IMG/VR virus record: IMGVR_UViG_3300027844_001828
Span: 1 to 64,000 of that record
Length of the DNA stretch: 64,000 nucleotides
Direction: 5' to 3' (one strand)
The translations under genes were made by a program, and so were the position numbers. The notes beneath the pieces were generated by a model. That model was not told the DNA's origin. It did no database searches and saw only the letters and a program-made list of their open reading frames with translations. Below are positions 42,362 to 61,482 of this stretch, in pieces. Position 1 is the stretch's first letter; each line of letters begins with the position of its first letter.

Positions 42362-44011
42362 ATGTCATTTAGAGAAATAGATATAGCTAAAATAAAGCAG
42401 CGTGAAAGATTGTTGCCAAATGAAGATGTGATGATTGAGGCTCAGAGAGAAGAAGTTCAATTGCTATCTATCGTCATGAGAAAAGGCGGTGATCAATACC
42501 TTCAGGATATGATGGATTGCACAGAAGTTGGAGTTGAGCATTTCTTGTTCGCTCCTAATGCAAGGATGTTCTCACTTGTTTGTAAGTGTTACATGAAGAA
42601 TAGATCGAGGCCAACAAGGATCTACATTGAAAAACAAGCCGAGTACTTCGACTCGCCTGCACAGGTTCGATCATTTTATGAAAAGATTGTTCGGTTAAAT
42701 GTAGAAGAAGATAATTATGAGCAGTTGAAAAGAGGGTTGGTCGCAAGATTCCTACAGCAGTCATTTTTTGAAATAACTATGGGCAAGACTCCAGATGAAG
42801 TCGGACTCATGCAAAGAATATTTGACGCCAAAGATGATCAAGATAAGTTGATTGACAAGATGAGGGACCAACTCTTAGGTCTTGAGGCTCCAAATGATTC
42901 CGAAGATAAATTCACAAAGACGGTTTTGGTTAAAGAGGAAATAGATGAGGTCTATGATGAAATCATGGATCGAAGAATGAATCCAGAGGCCCATCAAGGA
43001 ATGATGTGTGGAATCCCAGGATTTGACAACACCTTGAATGGTTGGAAGCCGGGGGAGTACTCGATTTTGGTTGGGCACCCTAACGGCGGTAAAACAACGA
43101 CCATGATAAACTTGGCTGTGGGAATGGCTGAACGAGGCGCGAGGGTGTGCTATGTTACGGTAGAGTCATCAAGTCAGCAGTTGATCGAGAGATTGATCTC
43201 AAGAGAGTCTAAGATTGATTCGGCGATTATCAAGAAGGGTGGACAGGGAGAAGATGAGATAAACCAAGAAAGAGCTAACAAGATATACCATGCAAAGGAA
43301 AAGATCAAAGAGATGCTTGGCGATACCTTGTGCTTTATCACTGTTCCTCAGAAGACTAAGATCACATCAATGCTTGCCCGTGTAGAAAAACAGCGTAGGT
43401 TTTCTGACTTCGATGTTCTATTTGTTGATTATCTTGATGTTATTGATTCCGTAGAGAGATATCCAGACAGAAAGGACTTGGAGATCGGTGACGTAAGTGT
43501 TAGACTTCAGTCTTATGGAAGAAGACATGGGTTGACCACCTTTACTGCACAGAGTTTCAATAATGAAATGATAAAGGCCATTAAGAAGTGCCAAGAGAAT
43601 GCGTCCGATGATGAAGAGTCTGATCTTGAAAACGTTGTTGGAATCGAAGGTGTTGGAGGAACTCAGAAGTTATCGAGAGACGCAGATTATATGTGGGGGA
43701 TAATACTGGGAAATCAAGGGTTGAAGCTCTCCATATTTTGGCTTAAATCAAGGAACACTGGAAAAGAAAGACCATTTATCTTAAACGCCTTTTTAGACTG
43801 TTGCCTCCTTGTTCAAAGAGAGAGCTTCCAGGCTGATGGAAACGGAACAGGTCCGATTCTTCCAAATGTAAGCGAAGAAGAAGTCGCTAAGGGTATTGAA
43901 GCAATAAGCTCGGACGAGGACGGGCCAGAAGAAATTAACAAGGGGAAAGACGGTTCGATTGCCGATGAGGTAAGCACAGGCAGTGGTTTCGCTATGAACC
44001 CAGAGGTATAG
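42362..44011 (+). CDS. dnaB: Replicative DNA helicase DnaB
   Basis: Walker A 'GHPNGGKTT', 'VCYVTVESS', Walker B 'FVDYLDVI', 'AQSFN', 'QKLSRDADY', 'LKSRN'. Confidence 0.9.
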   Translation: MSFREIDIAKIKQRERLLPNEDVMIEAQREEVQLLSIVMRKGGDQYLQDMMDCTEVGVEHFLFAPNARMFSLVCKCYMKNRSRPTRIYIEKQAEYFDSPAQVRSFYEKIVRLNVEEDNYEQLKRGLVARFLQQSFFEITMGKTPDEVGLMQRIFDAKDDQDKLIDKMRDQLLGLEAPNDSEDKFTKTVLVKEEIDEVYDEIMDRRMNPEAHQGMMCGIPGFDNTLNGWKPGEYSILVGHPNGGKTTTMINLAVGMAERGARVCYVTVESSSQQLIERLISRESKIDSAIIKKGGQGEDEINQERANKIYHAKEKIKEMLGDTLCFITVPQKTKITSMLARVEKQRRFSDFDVLFVDYLDVIDSVERYPDRKDLEIGDVSVRLQSYGRRHGLTTFTAQSFNNEMIKAIKKCQENASDDEESDLENVVGIEGVGGTQKLSRDADYMWGIILGNQGLKLSIFWLKSRNTGKERPFILNAFLDCCLLVQRESFQADGNGTGPILPNVSEEEVAKGIEAISSDEDGPEEINKGKDGSIADEVSTGSGFAMNPEV

Positions 44012-45133: not shown

Positions 45134-46196
45134 TGCGATAGCACCAACGAGAATTTGCGATATTGGCGGGTGGACTGATACCTGGTTCGCAGGACACGGG
45201 TCAATTTTTAATATTGCAGTATATCCGTATGTGGATGTCCAGGTTTCCATATTGAGGGACGAAGAGAGCGCTGGGAAAATTTTTCTTTCTATGGAAAATT
45301 ACGACGATAAGTACCAGTTTGACTCAAGCAAAAAAATTGATGGCCCACTTGGGTCAAAGTTATTTTTACGAGAGGGTAAGGGGGGAGAATTCGGAAAATA
45401 CCCACTCGTAGAGAAGGCTGTTGAGATAATGGATACCCCTATGGATGTAGGGTATAGTATCAGCGTGTATTCTGACGCGCCACCTGGAGCGTCCATCGGA
45501 ACCTCCGCCGCCGTTTCTGTCGCCTTAATCGCGAGCCTTGACAGGCTATCTGACGGCCATTTAACCGCTCATGAAATAGCTCAGATGGCGCATTCAATAG
45601 AAACCAAGTACTTAAATTTGGAATGTGGCGTTCAGGATCAGTTGGCAAGTGCCTATGGTGGTATTAATTTCATTGATGTAAATAGATACCCATACTCAGT
45701 CGTCTCACCAGTTCCTATTAGCGATCAGATTTGGTGGGAATTAGAACAGAGACTGGCATTAGTTTATATTGGAATTCCACATGAATCGAGTGCGATCCAT
45801 AAGATTGTTATTGAAAGCCTTGGGAAAACCCCCTCACTTGACAATCGAATAGAGAAATTAAGGGTTCTTGCGAGAAGAGCTAAAAACGCTTTGATCGATG
45901 GTAATTTCGTCGAATTTGGCGATATTATGAATGAAAGCACAGCTGTTCAAAAAAGTATGCATCCAGAATTGGTGTGCTCTCAGTTTAGAGAGATCATCGA
46001 TATAGTTAAACATTATAAAGCCCTTGGATGTAAAGTAAATGGGGCTGGCGGGGATGGCGGGTCTTTAAGTATCTTGTTTGGAGAATGTAGAGAGGATAAA
46101 AGGAAGTGCCTGAAAGTTCTTGAAGAAAAGGGGTTTAACATTCTCCCCATATATCTCGCAAGAAGGGGGCTTAGGGTTTGGGAATCAAGAGGGTAG
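45105..46196 (+). CDS. hddA: GHMP sugar kinase, D-glycero-alpha-D-manno-heptose-7-phosphate kinase (HddA)-like
   Basis: 'APTRICDIGGWTD', 'PPGASIGTSAA', 'GVQDQLASAYGGINFI' and 'GCKVNGAGGDGG' match the HddA/fucokinase subgroup of GHMP kinases. Confidence 0.75.
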   Translation: MSQEQITSVNAIAPTRICDIGGWTDTWFAGHGSIFNIAVYPYVDVQVSILRDEESAGKIFLSMENYDDKYQFDSSKKIDGPLGSKLFLREGKGGEFGKYPLVEKAVEIMDTPMDVGYSISVYSDAPPGASIGTSAAVSVALIASLDRLSDGHLTAHEIAQMAHSIETKYLNLECGVQDQLASAYGGINFIDVNRYPYSVVSPVPISDQIWWELEQRLALVYIGIPHESSAIHKIVIESLGKTPSLDNRIEKLRVLARRAKNALIDGNFVEFGDIMNESTAVQKSMHPELVCSQFREIIDIVKHYKALGCKVNGAGGDGGSLSILFGECREDKRKCLKVLEEKGFNILPIYLARRGLRVWESRG

Positions 46197-47090: not shown

Positions 47091-47343
47091 ATTCGAAGGA
47101 ATAGAAGTGATAGATGATGGCCCGGATGTTTATTCCAGGAGTAAGGACGGTAGAATCATGTTTAGATTTAATAGAATAGACGGGACGTTTGCCCTGTTCA
47201 GATCTACAAGAATCAGCGATGCAGAAAAAGAGTTCACGTTGATAATGTTTGATAAGTTGAGCAATGATATGACCGAGACGAGTAGAGAAGATGTAAAATG
47301 TGCATTAGAGTATAAACTTGAAAAGGACCTATTTTGCACATGA
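47080..47343 (+). CDS. Hypothetical protein
   Basis: GGAG SD upstream of ATG 47080; its stop overlaps the next ATG (ATGA). Confidence 0.55.
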   Translation: MENRFEGIEVIDDGPDVYSRSKDGRIMFRFNRIDGTFALFRSTRISDAEKEFTLIMFDKLSNDMTETSREDVKCALEYKLEKDLFCT

Positions 47344-49535
47344 GTAATGCAGAGCATAAAAACATATTACCATTTAGCATTTTCAAAACCATCCTCATTG
47401 TAGAGAAGAGGGCTCTTGATGAAGGGATATCATTAGTGGACTCTTGTTTTTTCGCAAGCTGTATGATGAGTGCGAACAAGATGCATTTCCACCCCACCTT
47501 TGACGATAAAGAGATGGGCAAGTTCTGCGCCTTCATAGATGAAAACTGTCTTGTTAGATCGAAAAAGAAGACTTTTAATATAGATGACATCAAGTTCGCG
47601 AAACCAGTAATCGACTGTGTTGTGAAAGCGAAGGTCGAACCCAACAATGTTGATGCATGTCACGTCTTTTATCTTTTGATGAAATCAGATAGGAAGTTGA
47701 ATTCAATCGCTGCGCAACACAATATAACCACGAATAAGATTCTTGAGGTTGTAAATAGGATTGGCTCAAGTAAAATTGAGAATGATAAAAAGGTTACGGG
47801 TAAAAACAAGAAGCCCGCCAAGAGTGTCGCAAGTGGAAAAGAAGATTTGATTTTCAAATACTGCATAGATTTTAATGAGAAAGCAGCCAAGGGCGAATTG
47901 TCACCAGTGTTTTGTAGGGATGATGAAATTGAGAAGGTGATCGTCTCCTTGATGAAAAAGAACAAAGCTAATCCATTGTTGATTGGTGAGCCGGGAGTCG
48001 GTAAGACAGCCATTGTTGAGGGTATAGCGCAAAAGTTCGCTGCCGGGGATGTGCCTAAGAGATTCAAAGGGTATAAGATTCTTGGATTAAGTATGTCATC
48101 GATCATTCAAGGGACAACCTTGAGAGGGCAGTTTGAAGAACGCCTCGAAGCCATAATGAAAAAGATAATCGAAACTGGCAATATCATTTTGTTCATTGAT
48201 GAGATCCACACAATGGTGGGTGCGGGAAACGACTCTAATGGATTGGATGCGGGAAATATTATGAAGCCGTATCTTGCCAGAGGTGAATTTAGATGCATCG
48301 GAGCGACAACGTTTGACGATTATTATAAGTACATGAAAAAAGACAAGGCTCTTTCGAGAAGGTTCCAGAGAATTTTTGTTTCAGAACCCAGTAAAGAAGA
48401 GACGATTGAAATAATTAGGGGGTTAGCACCAGGTCTTGAGACCTATCACGGTTGCGTCATTGACTCATCGTCTTTTGAAAAATCTGTTGATTTATGCCAA
48501 AGATTTATCAATGACAGGTTTTTTCCAGACAAGGCTATAGATTGTCTTGATCACGCTTGTGCAAAGTCATCATTAGACTTGAGTGTTGTCGGAGACGATA
48601 TTATTGAGGAAGTTATTAGCGACTTCTGTGACATCCCCGTCTCTTTAATCAGAACGAAAGAGTCTGTGAGGCTTGAGAAGCTTGAGGGCGCTATTGGGAG
48701 TGAGATATTTGGAAATGAAAATAGTATCAAAGAATTTTGCAATAGAATAAGATTCGCTTGCTCAACGAGGAAGTCTTCGAGTGGGCCGTTATGTTCTTTT
48801 GTGTTTTATGGCCCTCCGGGGATTGGTAAAAAATCTATTATCGGGATAACAGCGAGGCATCTGTATGGTGATCAATCCGTAATAGTAATAAATGGATCGG
48901 AATACTCAGAGAGCAATGCGATAAATAGAATAATTGGCTCTCCGCCTGGATATATCGGTTACGATGAGGAAGGGTATATTTTAAGAGAGGTGAGACGCAA
49001 GCCCCATACGATGATTTTAATTAAGAAGCAAGATCTAATGCATGCTACAGTGAAAGAGCAGTTTAAGCAGATAATAGAGCGTGGTGTGGTAACTGATGTT
49101 CATGGGATGATAGCGGACTTCTCAAATTGCGTTATCGCCTTCTCGGTGGACACCAGCAACAAAAGTAGTTTGGGATTTACTCAGGGAGGGAACAGCGTCA
49201 GTGGCGATGCGGAATGCGAGACAATAAAAAAGAATTGCCCATTATTATCCCGCGTGTCTCACCACATATCTTTCAACGACACACCATCCGAGTACGTGTC
49301 GAGTCTCGTATCAGTCGAAATGGAAAAATTCCATGACGAGTTGAAATTCAGCGAAATCCGTGTACATTATGATTCTAAGTGTATCAAGTATTTCGAATCC
49401 TTGAAGGGCTCTCCTTCATCTATTCGATCCGAAGTAAGAAACAAGCTCGAATACGAATTATGTAATGGGCTATCCTCAGACAATCGAGAGTACTGGTTTG
49501 AAGTAGTCGATGATGAAATAACAGTTAGGAGGTAA
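47340..49535 (+). CDS. clpA: ClpA/ClpC-family AAA+ chaperone; NBD1 intact, NBD2 degenerate
   Basis: NBD1 has 'GEPGVGKT', 'FIDEIH', 'CIGATT' and 'ALSRRFQ'. NBD2 has 'GPPGIGKK', pore loop 'GSPPGYIGY', Walker B replaced by 'LIKKQD', and an 'LGF' loop. There is no middle coiled-coil domain. Confidence 0.85.
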   Translation: MSNAEHKNILPFSIFKTILIVEKRALDEGISLVDSCFFASCMMSANKMHFHPTFDDKEMGKFCAFIDENCLVRSKKKTFNIDDIKFAKPVIDCVVKAKVEPNNVDACHVFYLLMKSDRKLNSIAAQHNITTNKILEVVNRIGSSKIENDKKVTGKNKKPAKSVASGKEDLIFKYCIDFNEKAAKGELSPVFCRDDEIEKVIVSLMKKNKANPLLIGEPGVGKTAIVEGIAQKFAAGDVPKRFKGYKILGLSMSSIIQGTTLRGQFEERLEAIMKKIIETGNIILFIDEIHTMVGAGNDSNGLDAGNIMKPYLARGEFRCIGATTFDDYYKYMKKDKALSRRFQRIFVSEPSKEETIEIIRGLAPGLETYHGCVIDSSSFEKSVDLCQRFINDRFFPDKAIDCLDHACAKSSLDLSVVGDDIIEEVISDFCDIPVSLIRTKESVRLEKLEGAIGSEIFGNENSIKEFCNRIRFACSTRKSSSGPLCSFVFYGPPGIGKKSIIGITARHLYGDQSVIVINGSEYSESNAINRIIGSPPGYIGYDEEGYILREVRRKPHTMILIKKQDLMHATVKEQFKQIIERGVVTDVHGMIADFSNCVIAFSVDTSNKSSLGFTQGGNSVSGDAECETIKKNCPLLSRVSHHISFNDTPSEYVSSLVSVEMEKFHDELKFSEIRVHYDSKCIKYFESLKGSPSSIRSEVRNKLEYELCNGLSSDNREYWFEVVDDEITVRR

Positions 49536-51705: not shown

Positions 51706-52782
51706 GTGAAGAAAATTCTATTTATTGACGGTATGAATTTGGCCTGGAAGGCTATCCATGCTTATAATCTCTCGACCTCAAGCGGACAAGATACGTCCGC
51801 TATTTTTGGTTTTATAAACCAGCTTATATCAGTAATAAACGGTAGAAAAGACTTGTTGATTGTTGTAGCGTGGGACGGTGGTTATGAAGAGAGGACCAGG
51901 CTCTCAAACGCGGGTATTGAAAAGGGCATTATCAATGCTGCGTATAAGTCTAATCGAAAATCAGACGATAAGACTCAAGACACCAAGATCAACTTAGACC
52001 CTCAGCTTAAAGAGATCCAACGCGCACTTAGCCACACTGACATAAAACAAATATTTGTAGCTGGCGAAGAGGCCGATGATGTTATCGCTTCATGCGCCAA
52101 AAAGATCGGTGGCAAGGCGGAGATACTCTGCTTAACCTGCGACCATGATTATTATCAATTATTGAGTGACAATTTTTCAATTTTGGATAGGATGCATGGC
52201 ACAGAGAATTTAATCACGAACAAAACATTCACCGAAGACAAGGGTATAGAGCCTTGTCAGTGGGTTGATTCTGGAGCGTTAAGCGGAGACACGAGTGATT
52301 GCATTATGGGGGTTCCCGGATGTGGAGAACCAACTGCTATAAAGCTCATCAAAGCACATGGAGATGTTGAGAGTGTCATTAGTCATTTTGAATCTGAATT
52401 GTCTATAGAAAGGGGTAAGTATCCAGATTTACAAACTCAGGATGAAGTAAATGAGTTGATCTCTCTTGGTGGGACTAAGAAAGTAAAGGGAAATAGTCAA
52501 AAGCCAAATTATGAGGGTATTTATGTTGGGATGCCCTTCAGCGGAGTTTGCTTGGCGAACTTGAGGGGTGACTTGAAAAAGGTAAAGAAGATTGATATAA
52601 AGGTCGTCATGTACCAAGAGAGAATCCGTCTTGCAAAGCAGTTGAAAAAGATGAGGTCAGATATAGACGTTCCAAACATAACGTTTGAATCGTCTTTTAA
52701 TGAAAGAGAGTTTTGCAGAATTTGTGGGGAATATGAGTTGTATTCTATAACCATGAAAGCTGAGGTTTTTAAGTTCTTATGA
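51706..52782 (+). CDS. 5'-3' exonuclease / flap endonuclease (PolA N-terminal / T5 D15-like)
   Basis: 'FIDGMNLAWKA', 'YKSNR', 'EADDVIAS', 'DHDYYQL', H3TH 'ALSGDTSDCIMGVPGCGEPTA'; GTG start with GGAG SD. Confidence 0.92.
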   Translation: MKKILFIDGMNLAWKAIHAYNLSTSSGQDTSAIFGFINQLISVINGRKDLLIVVAWDGGYEERTRLSNAGIEKGIINAAYKSNRKSDDKTQDTKINLDPQLKEIQRALSHTDIKQIFVAGEEADDVIASCAKKIGGKAEILCLTCDHDYYQLLSDNFSILDRMHGTENLITNKTFTEDKGIEPCQWVDSGALSGDTSDCIMGVPGCGEPTAIKLIKAHGDVESVISHFESELSIERGKYPDLQTQDEVNELISLGGTKKVKGNSQKPNYEGIYVGMPFSGVCLANLRGDLKKVKKIDIKVVMYQERIRLAKQLKKMRSDIDVPNITFESSFNEREFCRICGEYELYSITMKAEVFKFL

Positions 52783-53044: not shown

Positions 53045-54700
53045 ATGAAATTAGTAATATTAGAGTCTCCGAATAAGATATCCACCATTAAAAAGTATCT
53101 ACCTGATGACTTTGAGGTCTTGGCCTCAGTTGGTCATATCATGGAGATACCGGCAGATTCGATGAATATCAACATAGCAGATGGGACATTCGCTCCCGTT
53201 ATCAGACCGATACCAGGAAAAGAAGATACAATAAAGTTGATTCAGTTTAAGGCCAAGCAAGCCGATGAAGTGTTTATCTGTACTGACCCTGACCGTGAGG
53301 GAGAAAGAATAGCTCTAGATATCTATGAAATATTGGAAGATAAAAGCAAAGTTAAGCGAGCGGCTTTCCACGAGATCACAAAGAAAGCCGTGGCGAAGGC
53401 CATTAATGAGGCTGGAGATATTGATTTTAATAGAGCATACAGTCAAATGGCTCGTCAAATTATAGATCGAGTATTGGGGTACACAGTAAGTCCAATGGTA
53501 TGGAAGAGCATCGTTGGTGGAAAAAGCGCCGGGAGAGTCCAGTCTGTCGCCCTTGGGTTGATCGCAGAAAGAGAGGCGGAGATTGATTCTTTTGTAAGAG
53601 ACTTATTCTGGGATATCACTGTGGGTATGAAGATTGGAGGGGAAAATGTTTTCGGAGTTGTTTCAACAAACAATAAGGGGAATAGAATATACAAACAGGC
53701 CGACGCCGAGAGAGCAAAGGAGATCATTGAGAAAAGTGAGCTTAAGGTTTCAAACGTTAGCAAAAGTATCAAGGCAAGAAAGGCCCAGGCACCATTTGAC
53801 ACTGCTTCATTGCAGAAGTTGGCCTCTACAAATTTTGGGTGGTCAGGAAAAAAGACGATGGATGTTGCTCAGAAATTGTATGAAAAGGGAATGTGTACAT
53901 ATCATAGGACCGACAGTTTCAGCGTATCAACGGAGGCTCAAGAAGTCTGTTCAGGATATATAAAGACCGAACATGGAGACGATTACGTCCCAAAGACTCC
54001 AAATGTTTATAAGAAGAAAGGGCAAACATCTCAGGAGGCCCATGAGTGTATAAGGCCAACATCTGTAAGGGGAGACTCGTGGATTAATGAACCCTTAGAG
54101 AAAGATGAGCAGAGGCTTATAGATATGATCACGAACAGGTTTGTTGCCTCGCAAATGTCTGACTTGAGGGTAAAAAGCACCGTTATCACTATTCCATGCA
54201 AGCCGTGTAAGATTATTGTAGAGGGGAAGTCGATTGAGTTTGATGGCTGGTCAAAGGTTTGGCAAATAAGCGGAAAGGAAGTATTCCTTCCGAATATCGA
54301 AGAGAATGACACCCTCGATCTCAATGGAGTGGTTATTAAGGATCATGAGACCCGTCCACCGGAAAGGTACAACACGGGTACTTTAGTGTCAAAGATGGAG
54401 AAGCACGGGGTTGGAAGGCCCTCAACATGGGCGCAGATAATTGAAAACATCGTTGGGCGAGGATATGTTGAAAATGACGGGAAGAGGTTCGCTCTCACCA
54501 GTATAGGGAAGGATGTTTATACTTTCTTGGTGAATAAATTTAGAGAATCTTTCATGGACTTGGGATACACTTCTACAGTAGAAGCCGAGTTAGACAAAAT
54601 ATGTAAAGACCCGTCAATTAGAGTGGAAGTGATTTCTAACTTTTACGATAATATTAACAGGGCAATCAAAAAAAGTCGGCGCGTATCCCTTGGAATATAG
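53045..54700 (+). CDS. topA: DNA topoisomerase IA (core, no C-terminal zinc ribbons)
   Basis: 'LVILESPNK', 'SVGHI', 'TDPDREGE', 'SAGRVQS', active-site 'TYHRTDS', 'HECIRPT', 'GVGRPSTW'. Confidence 0.95.
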   Translation: MKLVILESPNKISTIKKYLPDDFEVLASVGHIMEIPADSMNINIADGTFAPVIRPIPGKEDTIKLIQFKAKQADEVFICTDPDREGERIALDIYEILEDKSKVKRAAFHEITKKAVAKAINEAGDIDFNRAYSQMARQIIDRVLGYTVSPMVWKSIVGGKSAGRVQSVALGLIAEREAEIDSFVRDLFWDITVGMKIGGENVFGVVSTNNKGNRIYKQADAERAKEIIEKSELKVSNVSKSIKARKAQAPFDTASLQKLASTNFGWSGKKTMDVAQKLYEKGMCTYHRTDSFSVSTEAQEVCSGYIKTEHGDDYVPKTPNVYKKKGQTSQEAHECIRPTSVRGDSWINEPLEKDEQRLIDMITNRFVASQMSDLRVKSTVITIPCKPCKIIVEGKSIEFDGWSKVWQISGKEVFLPNIEENDTLDLNGVVIKDHETRPPERYNTGTLVSKMEKHGVGRPSTWAQIIENIVGRGYVENDGKRFALTSIGKDVYTFLVNKFRESFMDLGYTSTVEAELDKICKDPSIRVEVISNFYDNINRAIKKSRRVSLGI

Positions 54701-54759
54701 GGTAATTTTTTATGATAATTTCTGGGTTTTCAGGTATCGGTGTGATTATAAGAGGAGGG

Positions 54760-55503
54760 ATGTCTCAATCGCCATTTAGATTTCTTAGCGCCGACATAAA
54801 TCTAAGTCAAAACATTAATATCTATCTACCATCATACGGTGGGGAAAATCTTAGAAGAATAATTTCTCCAAATATTGGAACAATATCGGGGAGGGTGTCT
54901 TTGATACCAACCGCCTCTTCAAGCGCAATGTTTTATAATATCGTCAAGGACTTCGAGCCGGTAGATGTCAAGCTGTATTATTATTCTGGCCGAAATAGAT
55001 CCTTCACCACTTGTTTCTTAGACAACCTGACGTTTTCTTGTAAGGCCGGTGAAATGGTCAATTTAAGTTTTGATGTGGTTTGTGAGGGTGAGGACTTTGA
55101 GTCCAATTCAAAAAGATACACTGTCGCTGAAAAACTTGTAACCTGGGACAAGACTGGAATTACTGGGTTCCCATTGAGCGCCACTGAGGATCTGAATAGT
55201 TTTACCTACTCTGTAAAGAACAACCTGGTTCTCATTAGAACAGCGGAAGGTCTGCTTCCAAGAAAGTACGGTAAAGGAATACAGGAGGTCAGTGGTAATT
55301 TGACTTATTTCTCATCTATAGATTCTTTGAGAGAGCCGTCTCGACTGAATAAATATAAGATTCAAGTTTCCAATGCAGTAACCTTTTATGTTGACGACTT
55401 CTCTGTTACCCATAAGATCGCGAACCATTGGACATACAAGACACCATTGAGTCCTGGGATCGTCATCACGACCCTTGACTGGACCCGCGTTGACGACATA
55501 TAA
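54760..55503 (+). CDS. Tail-tube-like protein, isolated from the structural module
   Basis: Two similar halves ('ISGRVSL...FTTCFLDNLTFSCKAGEMVNLSFDV' and 'LNSFTYSVKNNL...IQEVSGNLTY') resemble phage tube-fold proteins. GGAGG SD before ATG 54760. Confidence 0.5.
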   Translation: MSQSPFRFLSADINLSQNINIYLPSYGGENLRRIISPNIGTISGRVSLIPTASSSAMFYNIVKDFEPVDVKLYYYSGRNRSFTTCFLDNLTFSCKAGEMVNLSFDVVCEGEDFESNSKRYTVAEKLVTWDKTGITGFPLSATEDLNSFTYSVKNNLVLIRTAEGLLPRKYGKGIQEVSGNLTYFSSIDSLREPSRLNKYKIQVSNAVTFYVDDFSVTHKIANHWTYKTPLSPGIVITTLDWTRVDDI

Positions 55504-55517
55504 TTGTTGTCAGCAGC

Positions 55518-55595: not shown

Positions 55596-56690
55596 ATGCC
55601 AGAGATCTTTTATCAAAAATACAGGCCTAAATACATTGGTCACCTAATAGGTCAAGAAATCGTTTCCAAAATACTCACGAGAGCCTGTGAGAAAGAGTTT
55701 TTCCACCATTCGTACTTGTTATCTGGAAAACACGGCACCGGAAAGACCACAGTAGCCCGAATTATCGCATCTATGCTTGTTTGTGAGTCAAGGAAGACCG
55801 GAAGTGATGTCACATGTGGAAAATGCCCCGGCTGCAATGCGGTACATAAGAATGCGTCTCCAGACGTTCAGGAAATCGATGCGGCGTCGAATAGCAGCGT
55901 TGACAATATTAGATCCGTGATCGAAAGTAGCCGCCACTCTCCACAGGACTTGAAAAAGAGAGTGTTCATTATTGATGAATGTCATAGGCTCAGTCCAGCC
56001 GCTATGTCAGCTTTGTTGAAAACATTGGAAGAACCATCTTCCTCTTCGGTGTTCATATTGTGTACAACAGAGTTCGATAAGGTTTTGTCAACTATTAAAG
56101 GCCGGTGTCAAAAGTTGTTTTTCAATCCGGTACCACCCAAGAAAATGATTCCGTATTTAGGTGGTTTGTTTAAGTCAAGGGATGTTAAGATTGACACACC
56201 AGCGTTATTCAGTATCGCATCAGCCAGTGGCGGAAGTGTCCGAGAAGCGCTTGAGATTTCCCAAGAAGTTATTGTGTTAGCGGATGGCGAAGTGACTGAA
56301 GCAATGATTGCTGAGAATTACGGGATAGCAAACCGCCAGGATCTTTACACCTTAGTTGGTGCCACATTGTCGGACGACTTAATAAAAACTTTTGACACCT
56401 TAGAGCGACTTTTCGCATCAAATATTGATGTACGAAAGGTTTGCAGAGAAATTGGAGATATTTTTAGGAGTATAATGTTATCGAAAGTTGATTCAAAATA
56501 TATTAATGGATTGGTTGACTCAGAAAAAGAGTTCATTAGTAAGACGGGGTCAACAGTAAACATTTCGGATTTAGCGTCATTCTTGCCCTTTTTCGAAGAG
56601 GCGGAAAGATGTTTCGAAGTAAACGTAAACAACAAATGGGTATTAGAAGCCATAATTGTTAAGATAACTCAAAAGATAAACGGAAAATAA
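55596..56690 (+). CDS. dnaX: DNA polymerase III clamp loader subunit gamma/tau (short, gamma-like)
   Basis: 'YQKYRP...LIGQE', 'GKHGTGKTTVARI', Zn module 'CGKCPGC', 'EIDAASNSSVDNIR', 'IIDECHRLS', 'LLKTLEEP', 'GRCQ'. Confidence 0.95.
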   Translation: MPEIFYQKYRPKYIGHLIGQEIVSKILTRACEKEFFHHSYLLSGKHGTGKTTVARIIASMLVCESRKTGSDVTCGKCPGCNAVHKNASPDVQEIDAASNSSVDNIRSVIESSRHSPQDLKKRVFIIDECHRLSPAAMSALLKTLEEPSSSSVFILCTTEFDKVLSTIKGRCQKLFFNPVPPKKMIPYLGGLFKSRDVKIDTPALFSIASASGGSVREALEISQEVIVLADGEVTEAMIAENYGIANRQDLYTLVGATLSDDLIKTFDTLERLFASNIDVRKVCREIGDIFRSIMLSKVDSKYINGLVDSEKEFISKTGSTVNISDLASFLPFFEEAERCFEVNVNNKWVLEAIIVKITQKINGK

Positions 56691-56708
56691 TTCAGATAGT
56701 ACGCTTCC

Positions 56709-56730
56709 TTCCCTGCTCATGCAAGGGGAA
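56709..56730 (+). promoter_or_regulatory. Putative hairpin occluding the ribosome-binding site of the sigma factor gene
   Basis: ttccct-gc (tcat) gc-aa-ggggaa can pair and covers the AAGGGG SD 8 nt before GTG 56737. Confidence 0.35.
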
Positions 56731-56736
56731 TAACAA

Positions 56737-57444
56737 GTGGAAAAAGACACGAAGAAGAGACCAAAGAACAAAGCGAAAACCAAGGAACAGGTAGAAAAAT
56801 TAAATAACTATGCTCTTAGTTTGCAGATGAACATCGATAACGATGAGGCTTTTGAAGCAATCCATGCAGCATTGCATAACTTTATAATAAGCCAGGCTTT
56901 TCATAGGTTTATTATCAAGGGGCAAGAAGGTAAAGACTTGTATCAAGAATCGTTAATTGTCTTGTGGCAAAAGGCGATTCCTAAATTCAATCCAGATAAG
57001 GGAATGAGTTTTCTTGGGTTTGCTAAGATGTGTATAAATAGGCACCTGATCACAATATTGAATAGCGCCTTAAATCGAAAGAAAGACATTCCTATGAATA
57101 GGTCAGTTTCTCTCGATGAAGTATTTGGCGGTAAAGATGGAGATGAAGAGGGATGCTCCCTATATAACATGTTAGCTGATGAAGACACTGATTTTGTTAG
57201 AGATTTATGCTCGAATCAAGATCGACATGAGACGGTTAAAAAATTGAAAGCGGAGTTAAGTCCATTTGAATCTATGGTACTTTACCACTATCTTGATCAC
57301 CTATCATACAAAGAAATTGCCGAGTCTGTGTCAAACACTCTTGGCACACGATATAATGAAAAGTCAGTAGACAACGCTTTGCTTAGAATAAGGAGAAAAG
57401 CATCCGACCTGATGTCGGAAGTTCAGCTGGCCCTTTTTGAATAG
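56737..57444 (+). CDS. sigH: RNA polymerase sigma factor, SigH (Spo0H)-like
   Basis: 'KDLYQESLIVLWQKAIPKF...SFLGFAKMCINRHLITIL...RKKDIPMNRSVSLD' and 'LSPFESMVLYHYLDHLSYKEIA...KSVDNALLRIRRK' parallel the SigH signature segments. Confidence 0.85.
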   Translation: MEKDTKKRPKNKAKTKEQVEKLNNYALSLQMNIDNDEAFEAIHAALHNFIISQAFHRFIIKGQEGKDLYQESLIVLWQKAIPKFNPDKGMSFLGFAKMCINRHLITILNSALNRKKDIPMNRSVSLDEVFGGKDGDEEGCSLYNMLADEDTDFVRDLCSNQDRHETVKKLKAELSPFESMVLYHYLDHLSYKEIAESVSNTLGTRYNEKSVDNALLRIRRKASDLMSEVQLALFE

Positions 57445-57459
57445 AACAAGGAGTAGACA

Positions 57460-58635
57460 ATGCACGTTAAGACCCTCTCTGATAAGATATTGGAAACGAT
57501 TGATAAAGGCACCGTATCATTAGCCTTGCCGCCAAAAATTGAGGGGCCACTCTCGGAATTCGGGAGTGTGTCCTTTAGTGAAGATGGGATTTCCGTAAGG
57601 TCATCTGGCTCACATTCATCTTCAGAATATTCACGCGATTGGGACGATGATGAAGAATTTATTAGTGCCGGATCATGCGCGATAAATATCGCCAAGTTGA
57701 AATCTATGTTGTCTTCTACCAAGAAGGGAACTCCGGTTGAGATAAGGCTTAATGAGAAAGAAGCGAGTGGCGAAGCTATTGGGGTATTGGAATGTGAAGC
57801 TGGGAAAAGCTCTTGGAGGATGCCTTGCGTACACTCTGACATAGTTGCCGATGTGAGACCGGATAATGGGAAACTCATGCTTGAAGCAACAAAGAAAGAC
57901 CTTGTCATGGCGATCTCTTCTGTTTCCTATGCGGCGAACATAAGGGATGCATTTTTTACGAACTCAAACATTTGTTTCAGCGTAAATGGTGATAAGCTCT
58001 TAATGGGCGCGACAGATGATATTCGTTGTGCGGTCTACGAATTGAAATTGGAGAACCAATACGAAGATAGCAGATTCTTAGCTCCAGTAGTATGTGTCTC
58101 TCCAGCGTTGAAAAGTTTCAATGAGGGGCCGATGTCTATTTTTGTCGGTGACAAAAGCGTAAGGCTCGAACAGCATGGTCACCAAGTCAGATTCTCTCTT
58201 CCAGATGCCGCTGATGTAAACAGGTTTCCAAAGTACGAAGCCGCTGTGTTGGCTAATTATCCGTATTCAACCAGAGTCCTTGTCAGCGCATTTGCAGAAG
58301 CGATAAGCGCCTGTCAGAAAATGAACAAGGAAGAATTTTTACTCCGATACAAAGATGACGTTATGGATTTGTATGCTTACGACAGCAAAGATGGGATGTC
58401 ATATAAATCAGAGGTTGGGTACACTGGTGATAATATTAGTGTCTCAGTGGAGATATGCTCAATGTTTTTGATCGAGTTCATCAAGAAGGTTAGTGGAGAT
58501 GTCGTTAATATTGAGTTCAGAGAAAATGAGGGTAAGCAGAAGGTCATCAAGATCTCTGACGAGTCTGGGAGAACTTACATAATGAAATCACTTGTTGATA
58601 TGATTTGCGTACCTCCAGATTCAATTGAGGTATAA
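57460..58635 (+). CDS. dnaN: DNA polymerase III beta sliding clamp
   Basis: Three-domain length (391 aa). 'LVMAISSVSYAA...ICFSVNGDKLLMGATDDIRCA', 'RFPKYEAAV' and 'FLIEFIK' match beta-clamp motifs. Confidence 0.8.
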   Translation: MHVKTLSDKILETIDKGTVSLALPPKIEGPLSEFGSVSFSEDGISVRSSGSHSSSEYSRDWDDDEEFISAGSCAINIAKLKSMLSSTKKGTPVEIRLNEKEASGEAIGVLECEAGKSSWRMPCVHSDIVADVRPDNGKLMLEATKKDLVMAISSVSYAANIRDAFFTNSNICFSVNGDKLLMGATDDIRCAVYELKLENQYEDSRFLAPVVCVSPALKSFNEGPMSIFVGDKSVRLEQHGHQVRFSLPDAADVNRFPKYEAAVLANYPYSTRVLVSAFAEAISACQKMNKEEFLLRYKDDVMDLYAYDSKDGMSYKSEVGYTGDNISVSVEICSMFLIEFIKKVSGDVVNIEFRENEGKQKVIKISDESGRTYIMKSLVDMICVPPDSIEV

Positions 58636-58637
58636 TA

Positions 58638-59621
58638 ATGGCAGAAGTATACATTATTTGTGGCGATGACTATTTTAGAAAAATAGAGATAGATAAAGTA
58701 AAAAGCCAATACGATTTTTCTATCAAGTCGGACTATCCAGACAAGGAAGGGTTGTTCAGGGACTTGTTTTTTGAGTCGGTTTTTGACAGTGGTAGAAAGG
58801 CGGTTGTGGTCAGGGGCTTGGATATGAAGAAGTGGGCTTCAGATTTGATATTGAGATTTTCTAAATCGTCTTCAAATGATTGCTTGATCGTTAGCGAAGG
58901 AGACCCTAAAAAGGCAAAGGCCTTCGCAAAGAAGATAGATGGAGTCCAACTTGTTGAATTGAGCAAAGCTAATAAACCCAATGATGGGGTCAAGTTCTCT
59001 ATTGATAGAGCAAAAGACTTCGGGTTCACACTCAACAGAGACGGGGCCAAACTCCTTGTTGATCTTTGTGGATTAGATTATGCGATGTTATCAACCGAGA
59101 TTGACAAGTTGTCTGATATTTTTCCTGGCGAGGACATTGGAGAAAGAGAAGTGTATTTTTGCATAAATAGGTTATCTGGCAATTCCGACTTCCTCTCCCT
59201 CTACGTTTCCATTATGACAGGAGACACCTCCGAGTCCATAAGACATGCTCACAACATGAAGGATGAAATGACTCTTGACGCTGTATTGGGATCGATCATA
59301 AAAATTCTTCATGCTACAATAATAATCTCTCTTTTCGATGGCGATAAAGACAGAGCTTTTGATTTCTCAACAGCTAAGCGTGAAGAGGCTAAAACGAGCT
59401 TTTCATCTATCGGTGGAGTTAAGAAAAGTAAAGACCCGGCTCCCACAAAGTTCTTGTATAATGTATCTGATAAGGTGCAAAAAAGAATACTGTGCAAGCG
59501 AAAGGTTTTAGCTCTTTATGAAAATGCCTATAATTCATTAGTGAATAGTAGGGTCAAACAAAATGAAAACCTCGCTCTTGCACAGTTAGACAAGATAATT
59601 TGTTTAATGTGTAGGAGATAA
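58638..59621 (+). CDS. holA: DNA polymerase III delta subunit
   Basis: 'VYIICGDDYFR', 'LFFESVFDSGRKAVVV', 'LVDLCGLDYAMLSTEIDKL'; adjacent to dnaN. Confidence 0.75.
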   Translation: MAEVYIICGDDYFRKIEIDKVKSQYDFSIKSDYPDKEGLFRDLFFESVFDSGRKAVVVRGLDMKKWASDLILRFSKSSSNDCLIVSEGDPKKAKAFAKKIDGVQLVELSKANKPNDGVKFSIDRAKDFGFTLNRDGAKLLVDLCGLDYAMLSTEIDKLSDIFPGEDIGEREVYFCINRLSGNSDFLSLYVSIMTGDTSESIRHAHNMKDEMTLDAVLGSIIKILHATIIISLFDGDKDRAFDFSTAKREEAKTSFSSIGGVKKSKDPAPTKFLYNVSDKVQKRILCKRKVLALYENAYNSLVNSRVKQNENLALAQLDKIICLMCRR

Positions 59622-59623
59622 AT

Positions 59624-60280
59624 ATGATAATAGGAATCGACCAGTCCCTAACTGGAACTGGAATAGCTTCAATTGACGATGACGGAACTCTTCTAATGAC
59701 CCAAACGGTCGAAACGAGTAAGATGAGGGGCGTAGAGCGATTGGCTCAAATCTGTCAGGTGGTAGAAGAGATGTGCGATAACGTTGGCGAGAAATACGTT
59801 GTTGCCAGAGAGGGTTACTCTTTCGGAAGCAAGGGTAGAGCAACCTTTAGCCTCGGAGAACTCGGCGGCTGTTTGGATCTCACCTTGTACCAAATTGAAA
59901 ATCCAAATCTCAAGTCCTATTACATTATCCCGCCAACGACTATCAAGAAACTTTGCCTGGGATCTGGCGCTATAAAGAAAGATAGTGCCTATTTATTGAA
60001 GATATTCACCACTCTGGGTATAGAATTCGCTAACGATAACGAAGCTGATGCTTACATGATTGCTGTTTCTTTATGGAAGTATTTAAGGTCTTCAAAGGCC
60101 AATTCTATCAAAGGTTATTACGAGACCCTCAAGGTATATGAAAAAGAGGCAATTTTGAGTTCCCTAATTTCCAAATCAGGGTCTGGCGTAACTAAGGCCT
60201 CACTTAAAAATTTAACTGAGGAAGATTACGCAACAGCAGCCAAATCTGTTTTAGATGGCTACTTATGCTTTGCGAGATAA
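59624..60280 (+). CDS. ruvC: RuvC-like Holliday junction resolvase
   Basis: 'IIGIDQSLTGTG', 'EGYSF', 'LGELGG', 'PTTIKK', 'DNEADAY'. Confidence 0.88.
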   Translation: MIIGIDQSLTGTGIASIDDDGTLLMTQTVETSKMRGVERLAQICQVVEEMCDNVGEKYVVAREGYSFGSKGRATFSLGELGGCLDLTLYQIENPNLKSYYIIPPTTIKKLCLGSGAIKKDSAYLLKIFTTLGIEFANDNEADAYMIAVSLWKYLRSSKANSIKGYYETLKVYEKEAILSSLISKSGSGVTKASLKNLTEEDYATAAKSVLDGYLCFAR

Positions 60281-60290
60281 CGGAGTCGAT

Positions 60291-60509
60291 ATGATAAAGA
60301 AAAATTCAGATTCAATCCAAACCATTCAAGAATTATTAAAAAGAACTCATAATGGAAGGATTATAGACAAGCAAATTGACAATTCAAATGAAAATATTGA
60401 AGGGTATGGGAAGACGGAGTGCCAATTGTGTGGTCTAATCTTAACATCGGACCAATTCGTGAGCGGATGCCTTCAGTGTGGCTCGACAGAATTTAATGCA
60501 ATAACGTAA
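60291..60509 (+). CDS. Small zinc-ribbon protein
   Basis: GGAG SD; 'CQLC...CLQC'. Confidence 0.55.
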   Translation: MIKKNSDSIQTIQELLKRTHNGRIIDKQIDNSNENIEGYGKTECQLCGLILTSDQFVSGCLQCGSTEFNAIT

Positions 60510-60519
60510 GGAGTTAACA

Positions 60520-61482
60520 ATGGCTAGTATACAAACAGCTGGACATGGCAATCCAAATAGAGACGACGCATATCACAATCCATATTTTGACACTTCAGAT
60601 ATGCTCGCACAGTCGCTAAAAAATAATCTTAAGGGCGTGACAAGCGATAGTGTCCAGGTTGAGGGATCATCCGTTGATATTGAAGGAGATCCAGCGGCGG
60701 TCCCCTTTGGGGCGGTTGGACCCGCTGGAGAAATTGCTGAAAGAGGAAGTGACTCTCTCGGCGGAAATTATGTAAGCCCATTATTTTACGAGCAGGTTCT
60801 TAATAATCTTGATGCCGTGAAGGATGACTTGTCTGCCCTGTTCCAAAATTCGTCTTCAGACCATGTTGTGGCAGAAAAAATTGAGCAGACAATCAGAAGA
60901 GTCGAGGGGATTCAGCAAGACATGGGCGCAGAAATAGTCCCATTTGAGCCATTAAGGAACATGTCCGGGCTCGAAAATGGTGGTCCATTGGAGAACACTG
61001 AGAAGGTGATTGAGAACACTGTTCATCACTATAAGATGAATAAGATAAGCTCAATCGAGCCAGAACTTGTTGCCAATAAAGGATCAATCAGGATACATTT
61101 ATATGGCCATTCGGACAATCTGGGATTTGAAATACGAGGAACGGTAACCTCAAATAGCGACTTCAATGGGAACGAAGCTATCGATTATGTTTACTCGCCA
61201 GAAGGTGGGCTAATGACCGTTAAAGCCAAGATTGGCGGGCAATGGAGAGACGTGTCAGAGAATTGCAGAATAAACTTTGAAGTCAACAGAACTAAATTTG
61301 ATGAAGAGGGAACAGAGCCGTTCTGGACTTTCCTTGGAGAAAAAATAATTGCGGAGGGGAAGGAAAAAATCGTCTCGGCATTGAAGATCAATAATAACAG
61401 TTTGAGATTTGGTAAATGCAGGGTTTTTTCAAATGACCAAGTAATAATAGATAAGATCGAAAAGCTGGTTAGAATAAACTAA
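60520..61482 (+). CDS. Hypothetical protein (320 aa)
   Basis: AGGAG SD; intact ORF; no recognised motif. Confidence 0.65.
   Translation: MASIQTAGHGNPNRDDAYHNPYFDTSDMLAQSLKNNLKGVTSDSVQVEGSSVDIEGDPAAVPFGAVGPAGEIAERGSDSLGGNYVSPLFYEQVLNNLDAVKDDLSALFQNSSSDHVVAEKIEQTIRRVEGIQQDMGAEIVPFEPLRNMSGLENGGPLENTEKVIENTVHHYKMNKISSIEPELVANKGSIRIHLYGHSDNLGFEIRGTVTSNSDFNGNEAIDYVYSPEGGLMTVKAKIGGQWRDVSENCRINFEVNRTKFDEEGTEPFWTFLGEKIIAEGKEKIVSALKINNNSLRFGKCRVFSNDQVIIDKIEKLVRIN

What the first reader, a model, noticed from the sequence alone, without database searches (positions are those of the whole stretch)
55596..60280. Phage-encoded bacterial-type Pol III clamp and clamp loader (dnaX, dnaN, holA) in one operon with ruvC
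Seen: dnaX (364 aa, lacking the tau C-terminal domains), dnaN, holA and ruvC are co-transcribed, and DnaB, exonuclease and TopA lie nearby. Known: most phages use T4-type clamps/loaders or borrow the host's; in bacteria these genes are dispersed, and the loader also needs delta-prime (HolB). Inference: a near-autonomous Pol III-like replisome. The absence of holB here suggests either a simplified gamma/delta loader or a gene elsewhere.
Basis: partly seen in the sequence, partly recalled or inferred. Interest (0 to 1): 0.6.

Follow-up and report, generated by a model that had tools for sequence, protein, structure and literature searches.

The report
Marine jumbo phage's own clamp loader
A 250-kb marine phage carries its own bacterial-style DNA sliding clamp and a pared-down two-protein clamp loader with no delta-prime subunit, and a sigma factor gene inside the same gene block ends in a clamp-binding-like motif, which hints that the phage ties transcription to replication.

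Summary
The named genes are real and at the stated coordinates. They are dnaX (55596-56690, gamma-length, catalytic motifs intact), dnaN (57460-58635), a very divergent holA (58638-59621, confirmed by fold) and ruvC (59624-60280).

The window is the start of a 235.6-kb IMG/VR virus record found in seawater metagenomes. The same genome also encodes DnaB, a DnaG core, DnaE, a DnaQ-like exonuclease, LigA, topoisomerase IA, FEN and RecA, so a near-complete bacterial-type replisome is supported.

No holB was found in about 250 kb of the roughly 253-kb genome with any profile I could run. Seven related contigs keep the order dnaX-sigma-dnaN-holA. In a DnaX tree the phage group forms its own clade, outside 80 bacterial sequences from 17 named phyla, so this is not a recent host transfer.

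Phage-encoded beta, gamma and even delta-prime genes are already in GenBank (Streptococcus phage MS1), so this is a new variant, not a new kind. Most likely the loader is delta-prime-less, perhaps DnaX4-delta1.

The sigma factor ends in QLALF, and relatives keep a similar motif. This suggests, but does not show, clamp-coupled transcription as in T4 and Mu.

No capsid, terminase or sheath gene was detected.

The parts
55475..55504 (+). sigma-70-like promoter candidate in the 92-nt gap before dnaX (TTGACT, 18 nt, TATAAT)
   Evidence: 11 of 12 matches. Promoter-like sites are not enriched over shuffles in this region (20 found, 17 expected), so this is only suggestive.
55596..56690 (+). dnaX: gamma-length clamp-loader ATPase, 364 aa, without tau domains IV-V
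   Evidence: TIGR02397 323.8 bits (cut-off 250), PF13177 4.5e-39, phrog_5846 7.6e-65. Motifs read: Walker A at residues 44-51, four Cys of the zinc module (63, 74, 77, 80), Walker B DECH at 127, GRC in place of SRC (R170 and C171 invariant in 19 relatives), sensor-2 R216.
   Evidence: PF04542 region 2 at 29.4 bits (cut-off 24); region 4 hit 5.4e-4; best NCBIfam hits are SigH-type but far under their cut-offs. A sigma gene follows dnaX in all related contigs seen.
57424..57438 (+). codons for QLALF (residues 230-234), one residue before the sigma factor's C-terminus; a beta-clamp-binding-motif look-alike
   Evidence: Relatives have VLPMF, AIPLF, ELPLF, VPLF and LPIF at the same place after region 4. 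F234 is invariant in the five-sequence alignment A6. The loose motif occurs in the last 20 residues of only 7 of 202 proteins of this genome.
57460..58635 (+). dnaN: divergent beta sliding clamp, 391 aa, pI 4.9
   Evidence: PF00712 28.1 bits, PF02767 28.2 bits, phrog_947 1.9e-23, TIGR00663 2.9e-10 over residues 70-369. pI. No tblastn match in GenBank phages.
58638..59621 (+). holA: divergent delta subunit (clamp 'wrench'), 327 aa, no P-loop
   Evidence: TIGR01128 4.5e-18. AF2 pLDDT 90.7. The eight best Foldseek matches are delta subunits of B. subtilis and E. coli. A profile search of 1.84 billion representatives finds 12 close relatives, then bona fide HolA proteins carrying PF06144 and PF21694.
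58776..58787 (+). codons for SVFD (delta residues 47-50), the likely beta-interaction element in domain I
   Evidence: S47, F49 and D50 are invariant in alignment A2. More distant relatives have SLFD or PLFA. Equating this with the hydrophobic plug of E. coli delta rests on my knowledge of structure 1JQJ, not on a test here.
59624..60280 (+). ruvC-like Holliday junction resolvase, 218 aa; its start lies 2 nt after the holA stop
   Evidence: PF02075 27.2 bits (cut-off 22.2), phrog_159 4.3e-28.
60255..60509 (+). small conserved protein, 84 aa, with two CxxC pairs
   Evidence: A 76-80 aa gene holds this position in most related contigs. Sequence read. Function unknown.
60520..61482 (+). conserved 320-aa protein of unknown function; tested as a delta-prime candidate and rejected
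   Evidence: 19 homologues. The AF2 model (pLDDT 72) has N-terminal helices and an antiparallel beta sheet, with no PDB match at E <= 0.001. hhalign against DnaX and delta profiles gives probability under 1%.
54712..55503 (+). Phage_tube_2-like protein immediately upstream of dnaX
   Evidence: PF18906 32.7 bits (cut-off 27). The gene keeps this position in the relatives, several of which also hit PF18906.
53045..54700 (+). type IA topoisomerase (TopA-like)
   Evidence: PF01131 5.8e-109, PF01751 8.9e-21.
51706..52782 (+). 5'-3' exonuclease / flap endonuclease
   Evidence: PF02739 1.4e-28, PF01367 3.5e-16.
42362..44011 (+). DnaB-type replicative helicase
   Evidence: PF03796 4.0e-24, 82 bits.

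Best explanation
This is the conserved core of the replication module of an uncultured marine jumbo phage of about 250 kb.

What the phage makes:
- its own bacterial-type sliding clamp (beta);
- an active AAA+ loader motor, a gamma-length DnaX without the tau domains;
- a highly diverged delta 'wrench'.

How it most likely works (inferred). DnaX and delta assemble through their C-terminal collar domains into a pentamer with no delta-prime, most simply DnaX4-delta1. That is the same 4:1 layout as T4 gp44/gp62 and archaeal RFC. Delta's conserved S-[LV]-F element pries open the acidic, ring-type beta dimer. ATP-bound DnaX places the ring on primed DNA for the phage DnaE.

DnaX lacks tau domains IV-V. 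The relatives' DnaE shows only PHP, polymerase, finger and HhH domains, and the window's DnaE ends just after the HhH region. The polymerase is therefore probably not tethered to the loader or helicase through tau.

The sigma factor gene embedded between dnaX and dnaN, with its C-terminal clamp-binding-like tail, may use the loaded clamp to couple transcription to replication. That step is a hypothesis.

Shown here: gene identities, motif conservation, the delta fold, synteny, lack of any detectable holB, and a separate phylogenetic position. Inferred: stoichiometry, delta-beta and sigma-beta contacts, and co-transcription.

The confidence of 0.65 is for the whole statement. I put the gene identities and the phage-encoded clamp and loader at about 0.9, a loader that truly works without any delta-prime at about 0.45, and a sigma-clamp contact at about 0.35.
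For: Gene identities.

DnaX catalytic residues are intact and invariant across 19 relatives.

Beta has pI 4.9. Kazlauskas and Venclovas (PMC3201878) associate lower clamp pI with ring-forming, loader-dependent clamps.

No second clamp-loader paralogue was found:
- PF13177 and TIGR00678 hit only dnaX in six frames.
- A DnaX-family HMM run with --max against all 316 ORFs finds only dnaX.
- hhalign of each ORF of 150-600 aa gives only P-loop-level matches.
- Phage MS1's delta-prime used as a probe finds only dnaX.
- 14.6 kb beyond the record end is also negative.

The only other small AAA protein (188670-189689) belongs to a widespread classical-AAA phage family.

The order dnaX-sigma-dnaN-holA holds in seven related contigs, including one whose DnaX is only 36% identical, and none shows a second PF13177 gene. 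ruvC follows holA only in the closer ones.

The rest of the replisome is encoded: DnaE, DnaQ-like, DnaG core, DnaB, LigA.

Phylogeny: the phage clade has SH-aLRT 99. The median phage-to-bacterium path is 3.8, against 2.3 between bacteria.
Against: - No experiment or complex model supports the stoichiometry.
- All studied bacterial loaders need delta-prime, so a host-supplied or unrecognisably diverged fifth subunit is possible. About two thirds of the ORFs I looked at have no annotation.
- About 2 kb of the roughly 253-kb genome was not seen.
- The phage MS1 gene set does include delta-prime, so phages do not generally dispense with it.
- No capsid, terminase or sheath gene was detected. The viral nature rests on IMG/VR and CheckV, a tube-like protein, tRNAs and typical phage accessory genes.
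- The RNA evidence comes from assembled contigs of RNA libraries, without a DNA-contamination control.
Confidence: 0.65

Rival explanations
1. Hybrid loader. The phage supplies gamma and delta, which must match its divergent clamp, but borrows the host's delta-prime as the fifth, stator subunit.
For: holB is universal in bacteria (established knowledge), so it would be available in any host. No phage holB is detectable.
Against: Phage DnaX is at most about 39% identical to any cellular DnaX, and the clade sits outside all 17 sampled phyla. Collar-domain compatibility with a host subunit is therefore doubtful. The rest of the replisome is self-encoded. The host is unknown, so nothing could be tested.
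Confidence: 0.2
2. A phage delta-prime exists but has diverged beyond profile detection, or lies in the last roughly 2 kb not seen.
For: Delta itself escaped Pfam and PHROGs and needed a fold to confirm it. Most ORFs are orphans. Conserved unannotated genes of 300-375 aa lie just downstream (60520-61482 and 63414-64541).
Against: Delta-prime is a close DnaX paralogue and is normally caught by PF13177 or TIGR00678; MS1's copy matches the DnaX profile at 96% probability. Neither 300-375 aa candidate shows a detectable loader fold. The first models as helices plus a beta sheet. For the second, the Atlas's own model is poor (pLDDT 0.41) and gave no usable match. The sequence seen beyond the record end holds only small ORFs.
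Confidence: 0.15
3. The clamp system is not mainly for genome replication. It is a platform for recombination or repair (RuvC, RecA, RecD2 and SbcCD are neighbours) and for sigma-dependent transcription, while bulk synthesis relies on DnaE alone or on host factors.
For: ruvC starts 2 nt after the holA stop. A sigma gene with a clamp-binding-like tail is embedded in the block. The DnaE C-terminus shows only a weak, poorly conserved clamp-motif candidate.
Against: Clamp, loader and DnaE are kept together in every relative seen. A 250-kb genome needs processive synthesis. The two roles are not mutually exclusive; in T4 one clamp serves both.
Confidence: 0.1
4. The contig is cellular or a plasmid, or the genes are recent acquisitions from the host.
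For: No capsid, terminase or sheath family was detected. The gene set is strikingly bacterial in type.
Against: It is an IMG/VR virus record with CheckV 93%. It has no rRNA, only tRNAs. A Phage_tube_2 protein scores over its cut-off. There are many PHROG hits and no plasmid match. A pattern scan with the delta alignment over one genome for each of 185,579 species confirmed no relative. The DnaX clade lies outside all sampled bacterial phyla.
Confidence: 0.04

Closest known systems
Bacterial gamma complex (DnaX3-delta-delta') with beta clamp (E. coli, B. subtilis)
   Same: Homologous DnaX motor with zinc module, Walker A and B, arginine finger and sensor 2. Homologous three-domain delta (best fold matches 3zh9, 8giy_A, 1jr3_D). 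Homologous beta clamp. Bacterial-type DnaE, DnaB, DnaG core and LigA in the same genome.
   Different: No delta-prime is detectable. DnaX has no tau domains IV-V. The relatives' DnaE shows no OB domain in Pfam and the window's DnaE ends just after the HhH region. The genes are clustered in one block with a sigma factor and RuvC. Delta and beta fall below or near family cut-offs.
Streptococcus phage MS1 (KY629621) replication genes
   Same: A phage that encodes DnaN, a gamma-length DnaX, a delta-like protein (gp16, annotated 'gamma'; hhalign 96.7% to the delta profile), RecA, a resolvase and a small sigma factor.
   Different: MS1 has an annotated delta-prime (gp15) right after dnaX, where this phage has a sigma factor. 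MS1 is a 56-kb siphophage of a Gram-positive pathogen. Its DnaX is only about 30% identical. The MS1 sigma factor has no such C-terminal motif.
T4 gp44/gp62 loader, gp45 clamp and the gp55/gp33 late-transcription system
   Same: A phage-encoded clamp and a two-gene loader; T4's has 4:1 stoichiometry and the same is proposed here. A sigma-like factor with a C-terminal clamp-binding tail couples late transcription to replication (PMC2988020, PMC7892883, listed).
   Different: T4's parts are of the archaeo-eukaryotic PCNA/RFC type, and gp55 is a minimal sigma. Here all parts are bacterial-type (beta, gamma, delta, a sigma-70 factor with regions 2 and 4). No gp33-like co-activator was identified. 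Clamp binding by the sigma factor is untested.
Phage Mu MuC and the host beta clamp (PMC12867686)
   Same: A bacterial beta clamp enlisted for late transcription through near-consensus clamp-binding motifs on a transcription factor.
   Different: Mu uses the host clamp and an activator that works with host sigma-70. Here the candidate motif is on a phage sigma factor, and the clamp and loader are phage-encoded.
Phages RSL1 and Ma-LMM01 (beta plus gamma only), Bacillus phage 0305phi8-36 (DnaE plus beta, no loader) and jumbo group 3.2 (phage G, c-st) with Pol III alpha
   Same: Earlier surveys found bacterial-type replicase parts in large phages (PMC3201878, PMC4889955, PMC7824862).
   Different: Those surveys report only a gamma homologue as the loader subunit, or no loader at all. 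Here a delta is also present, and the full set (DnaE, beta, gamma, delta) is kept together in a marine clade with no close GenBank phage.

Membership tests
DnaX (gamma/tau) clamp-loader ATPase | Full-length match to the N-terminal DnaX model above its trusted cut-off | tested here: met
   TIGR02397 323.8 bits against cut-off 250, covering residues 4-357.
DnaX (gamma/tau) clamp-loader ATPase | Walker A, Walker B, SRC arginine finger, sensor 2 and four-Cys zinc module | tested here: met
   GKHGTGKT at 44-51; DECH at 127; GRC with R170 and C171 invariant in relatives (most have SRC); R216; C63, C74, C77, C80.
DnaX (gamma/tau) clamp-loader ATPase | Tau-specific domains IV-V (DnaB and alpha binding) | tested here: not met
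   The protein ends at residue 364. All 17 closest relatives are 362-368 aa. It corresponds to gamma only.
Delta subunit (HolA) | Sequence model above trusted cut-off | tested here: not met
   TIGR01128 65.6 bits against cut-off 80. PF06144 has no hit even at E <= 10.
Delta subunit (HolA) | Three-domain delta fold (degenerate AAA-like domain I, lid, helical collar) without a P-loop | tested here: met
   AF2 pLDDT 90.7. The eight best Foldseek matches are delta chains, E from 7e-12 to 3e-9, ahead of gamma chains. No GKT motif in the sequence.
Delta subunit (HolA) | Binds and opens the beta clamp through a hydrophobic element of domain I | not testable with these tools
   A conserved S-[LV]-F element is present, but binding needs biochemistry or a structure.
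Beta sliding clamp (DnaN) | Pfam beta-clamp domains above gathering score; three-domain length | tested here: met
   PF00712 28.1 bits (cut-off 24.4) and PF02767 28.2 bits (cut-off 27), both marginal. 391 aa. phrog_947 1.9e-23. TIGR00663 reaches only 39.6 bits against 137.65.
Canonical bacterial gamma complex (gamma3-delta-delta') | A delta-prime (HolB) subunit encoded alongside | tested here: not met
   PF13177, TIGR00678, a DnaX-family HMM with --max, per-ORF hhalign and the MS1 delta-prime probe all find only dnaX. The extra 14.6 kb past the record end is negative.
Canonical bacterial gamma complex (gamma3-delta-delta') | Chi and psi accessory subunits | not tested
   No search was made. 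These subunits are restricted to some proteobacteria (my own knowledge).
Clamp-activated late transcription (T4 or Mu type) | A transcription factor carrying a terminal clamp-binding motif | tested here: inconclusive
   The sigma factor ends in QLALF-E. Six relatives keep [LIV]-x-[LMI]-F at the same place. The motif fits the QLxLF consensus, which I cite from memory. Binding was not tested.
Clamp-activated late transcription (T4 or Mu type) | Late promoters and dependence of late transcription on clamp loading | not testable with these tools
   This needs an infection time course or in-vitro transcription.
RuvC resolvase | Pfam RuvC above gathering score | tested here: met
   PF02075 27.2 bits (cut-off 22.2) over residues 2-148; phrog_159 4.3e-28.
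Tailed phage (Caudoviricetes) | Terminase large subunit, major capsid protein, portal or sheath | tested here: not met
   PF03237, PF17289, PF03354, PF05065 and PF04984 give no hit. PHROG or Pfam scans of about 50 larger ORFs found only a tube-like protein and a weak tail-protein hit. Divergence is the likely reason, but that is unproven.

The most novel reading that the evidence does not exclude
A marine jumbo-phage lineage has built, entirely from bacterial-type parts, the equivalent of the T4 system. It would have a minimal two-gene clamp loader (DnaX4-delta1, no delta-prime, no tau). It would also have a sigma-70-family factor that docks on the phage's own beta clamp through a C-terminal QLxLF-like tail, so that late transcription fires only on replicating DNA. 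That would be convergent with T4 gp45-gp55/gp33 and with Mu MuC. It would also show that a DnaX-family loader can work without delta-prime.
Probability: 0.3. Interest if true: 0.8.

Novelty: new variant of a known kind. Interest (0 to 1): 0.55.

Why it matters
Bacterial clamp loaders are thought always to need delta-prime as a rigid stator and as donor of an arginine finger. A natural, conserved gamma-plus-delta system would test that assumption directly. It would also offer a simpler loader for structural and mechanistic work.

The lineage shows that phages can carry an almost complete, deeply diverged Pol III-type replisome. That bears on whether such genes are host captures or old viral lineages.

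If the sigma tail binds the clamp, replication-coupled transcription would have arisen a third time, here with a true sigma-70-family factor and a beta clamp.

The phage is common in seawater data sets, so the system is ecologically relevant.

Tried and rejected
- Complex prediction of DnaN with delta domain I (residues 1-135): no verdict. It is not used as evidence either way.
- Delta-prime candidates rejected:
  - the 320-aa protein at 60520-61482 (helices plus a beta sheet, no PDB match, hhalign probability under 1%);
  - the 375-aa protein at 63414-64541 (Atlas model pLDDT 0.41, no usable hit);
  - the AAA protein at 188670-189689 (classical-AAA phage family, N-terminal extension, no collar).
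- DNA similarity of the region to GenBank phages: none.
- tblastn of delta against phages gave one marginal hit. tblastn of beta gave none. tblastn of delta against plasmids gave none.
- Pattern scans with delta in IMG/VR contigs and in one genome per species confirmed no relatives, so no host link was obtained.
- Hallmark virion genes (three terminase families, HK97 capsid, sheath) were not found. The six giant ORFs at 1066-31184 have no Pfam hit.
- The strongly conserved 684-aa protein at 171028-173082 matches only hypothetical proteins of Xanthomonas jumbo phages.
- Looking up the first ORF of the window (67-1059) in the contig index found nothing, so the sequence upstream of the record start was not examined.
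- The MS1 genome paper does not mention polymerase, replication or clamp. Whether MS1 has a DnaE was not settled.

Full report
**What is there**

The window is the first 64 kb of a 235,624-bp IMG/VR virus record, classed as linear with a CheckV completeness of 93%.

- 55596-56690 encodes a 364-aa DnaX. It scores above the trusted cut-off of TIGR02397 (323.8 bits against 250) and matches PF13177 and phrog_5846.
- The DnaX motifs are intact: Walker A (residues 44-51), four zinc-module cysteines, Walker B (DECH), the arginine finger (GRC here, SRC in most relatives; R170 and C171 invariant) and sensor-2 R216.
- DnaX stops after domain III, so it corresponds to gamma, not tau.
- 57460-58635 encodes a 391-aa beta clamp. 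It passes the Pfam thresholds only narrowly, but phrog_947 (1.9e-23) and TIGR00663 (2.9e-10) support it. Its pI is 4.9.
- 59624-60280 is a RuvC-type resolvase.

**The gene called holA**

This was the least secure call.
- It has no Pfam or PHROG hit. TIGR01128 gives 4.5e-18 but stays under the cut-off.
- A profile search of 1.84 billion representative proteins found 12 close relatives, then about 280 distant ones. Sampled distant hits carry the two HolA Pfam domains.
- An AlphaFold2 model built on a 53-sequence alignment reached pLDDT 90.7. Its eight best PDB matches are delta subunits of B. subtilis and E. coli, ahead of gamma chains.
- The protein has no P-loop. It keeps a conserved S-[LV]-F element in domain I. 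I equate this with the beta-interaction plug of E. coli delta from my own knowledge of the 1JQJ structure.

I accept it as a divergent delta.

A 235-aa sigma-70-family factor (56737-57444) lies between dnaX and dnaN. Region 2 scores over the Pfam cut-off, region 4 is weaker, and the SigH-type NCBIfam hits are far below their cut-offs.

The gaps between genes are 46, 15, 2 and 2 nt. A near-consensus sigma-70-type promoter lies in the gap before dnaX, and none of the terminator-like hits lies in a gap between genes.

Three seawater RNA libraries hold identical short contigs on the block, some bridging dnaX-sigma and dnaN-holA. These are assembled contigs, and DNA carry-over was not controlled. 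Co-transcription is therefore plausible, not shown.

**Context**

The same genome encodes the following.
- DnaB (42362-44011).
- FEN and topoisomerase IA.
- A RecD2-like helicase.
- DnaE (68294-71524).
- RecA, a DnaG core and an SbcCD-like fusion.
- A DnaQ-like exonuclease near 100.6 kb.
- RecJ.
- NAD-dependent ligase and ribonucleotide reductase.

It has 11 tRNAs and no rRNA. In the relatives, Pfam finds only PHP, polymerase, finger and HhH domains in DnaE. The window's DnaE ends shortly after the HhH region. That fits the lack of tau in DnaX.

**Is delta-prime really absent?**

Every search found only dnaX.
- PF13177 and TIGR00678 over six frames of the whole record.
- A DnaX-family HMM with filters off against all 316 ORFs.
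- hhalign of each ORF of 150-600 aa against the DnaX alignment, which gave only P-loop-level matches.
- The delta-prime of phage MS1 used as a probe.

Three size-matched candidates were examined and rejected.

The record is incomplete, so I walked 14.6 kb past its end on nearly identical contigs. That stretch holds only small ORFs and gave no hit. About 2 kb of a roughly 253-kb genome remains unseen.

**Relatives and origin**

Seven related metagenome contigs keep the order dnaX-sigma-dnaN-holA, and none shows a second PF13177 gene. In the closer ones the full block reads FEN, TopA, tube-like protein, dnaX, sigma, dnaN, holA, ruvC and then, further on, RecD2 and DnaE. One contig in the set has a DnaX only 36% identical to the window's.

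DnaX has 17 gamma-length relatives at 47-57% identity. Identity then drops to at most about 39% for cellular proteins of many phyla.

I built a tree of 19 phage-type and 80 bacterial DnaX sequences. The phage sequences form one clade (SH-aLRT 99) outside all bacterial rows, while most of the well-sampled bacterial phyla cluster. Fast evolution in phages could exaggerate the separation, but nesting inside a host phylum is not seen.

Identical sequence occurs in many seawater and marine metagenome runs from separate studies.

**Mechanism**

The simplest reading is a delta-prime-less pentamer, DnaX4-delta1, which mirrors T4 gp44/gp62 and archaeal RFC. That E. coli DnaX alone can form tetramers is my recollection of the literature, not something tested here. 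A hybrid with host delta-prime, or a hidden fifth subunit, remains possible.

**The sigma tail**

The sigma factor ends in QLALF followed by one residue. The relatives have VLPMF, AIPLF, ELPLF, VPLF and LPIF at the same position after region 4. In the five-sequence alignment the phenylalanine is invariant, in an otherwise variable tail.

The loose motif occurs in the last 20 residues of only 7 of 202 proteins of this genome. It resembles the bacterial clamp-binding consensus.

T4 activates late genes through its clamp and a sigma-like factor (PMC2988020, PMC7892883). Mu was recently shown to use the host beta clamp through motifs on MuC (PMC12867686). A sigma gene wedged between the loader and clamp genes fits the same logic. 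This remains a hypothesis.

**Novelty**

Surveys from 2011, 2016 and 2021 already report Pol III alpha, beta and gamma homologues in phages. GenBank's phage MS1 is annotated with beta, gamma/tau and delta-prime, and its 'gamma' gp16 is delta-like by profile comparison.

The kind is therefore known. What is new is a marine jumbo-phage clade with gamma and delta but no delta-prime or tau, and an embedded sigma factor with a clamp-motif tail.

**Caveat**

I found no capsid, terminase or sheath gene.

Noticed in passing
G000 180852-182294 (L017:17852-19294), outside the window: A 480-aa protein with the eukaryote-style PARP1 architecture: WGR, PARP regulatory and PARP catalytic domains. An NAD synthetase (159292-161226) and a nicotinamide phosphoribosyltransferase-like gene (154082-155251) lie in the same genome.
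   Followed up: no
window 54712-55503: A Phage_tube_2-like protein, scoring over the Pfam cut-off, sits inside the replication block directly before dnaX. The gene keeps that position in the relatives seen. This is an odd place for a tail-tube fold.
   Followed up: partly
L008, L009, L021 and a contig without DNA: Relatives carry inteins with LAGLIDADG homing endonuclease domains in DnaE (L008, L009, L021). The contig without DNA has one in TopA and intein or Hint hits in its DnaE. The window's genome has neither (TopA 551 aa, DnaE 1076 aa).
   Followed up: no
window 1066-31184: Six consecutive giant ORFs of 942 to 2,759 aa have no Pfam hit. Of the four also scanned against PHROGs, one gave a weak tail-protein hit.
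   Followed up: partly
whole record G000: No terminase, HK97-type capsid or sheath family was detectable. The virion genes must be highly divergent, or the element is not a conventional tailed phage.
   Followed up: partly
window 41336-42358: The 340-aa unannotated protein immediately upstream of DnaB ends in ...SFITIFAR. This is another [LIV]-x-[LMI]-F motif near a C-terminus and could be a second clamp-binding candidate.
   Followed up: no
window 47334-49535 and 45105-46196: A ClpB/ClpA-like double-AAA protein (733 aa) and a GHMP-family kinase lie just upstream of the replication block. The Clp-like gene also lies upstream of the block in at least two relatives, L008 and L110.
   Followed up: no
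G000 78338-81916 (L010:15338-18916): A single 1,192-aa ORF combines a calcineurin-like phosphoesterase domain (as in Mre11/SbcD) with SMC and SbcC-type ATPase hits, apparently a fused SbcCD.
   Followed up: no
G000 record end (235624); L106 and L108: Contigs about 99.7-99.9% identical continue at least 14.6 kb past the record's end. That stretch holds only small ORFs and short repeats that recur near 224-234 kb. The record is truncated there.
   Followed up: partly
G000 111397-119104 (L014:8397-16104): A cluster of eight tRNA genes (Pro x2, Gln, Ser, Leu x3, Glu). Three more (Met x2, Arg) lie elsewhere.
   Followed up: no
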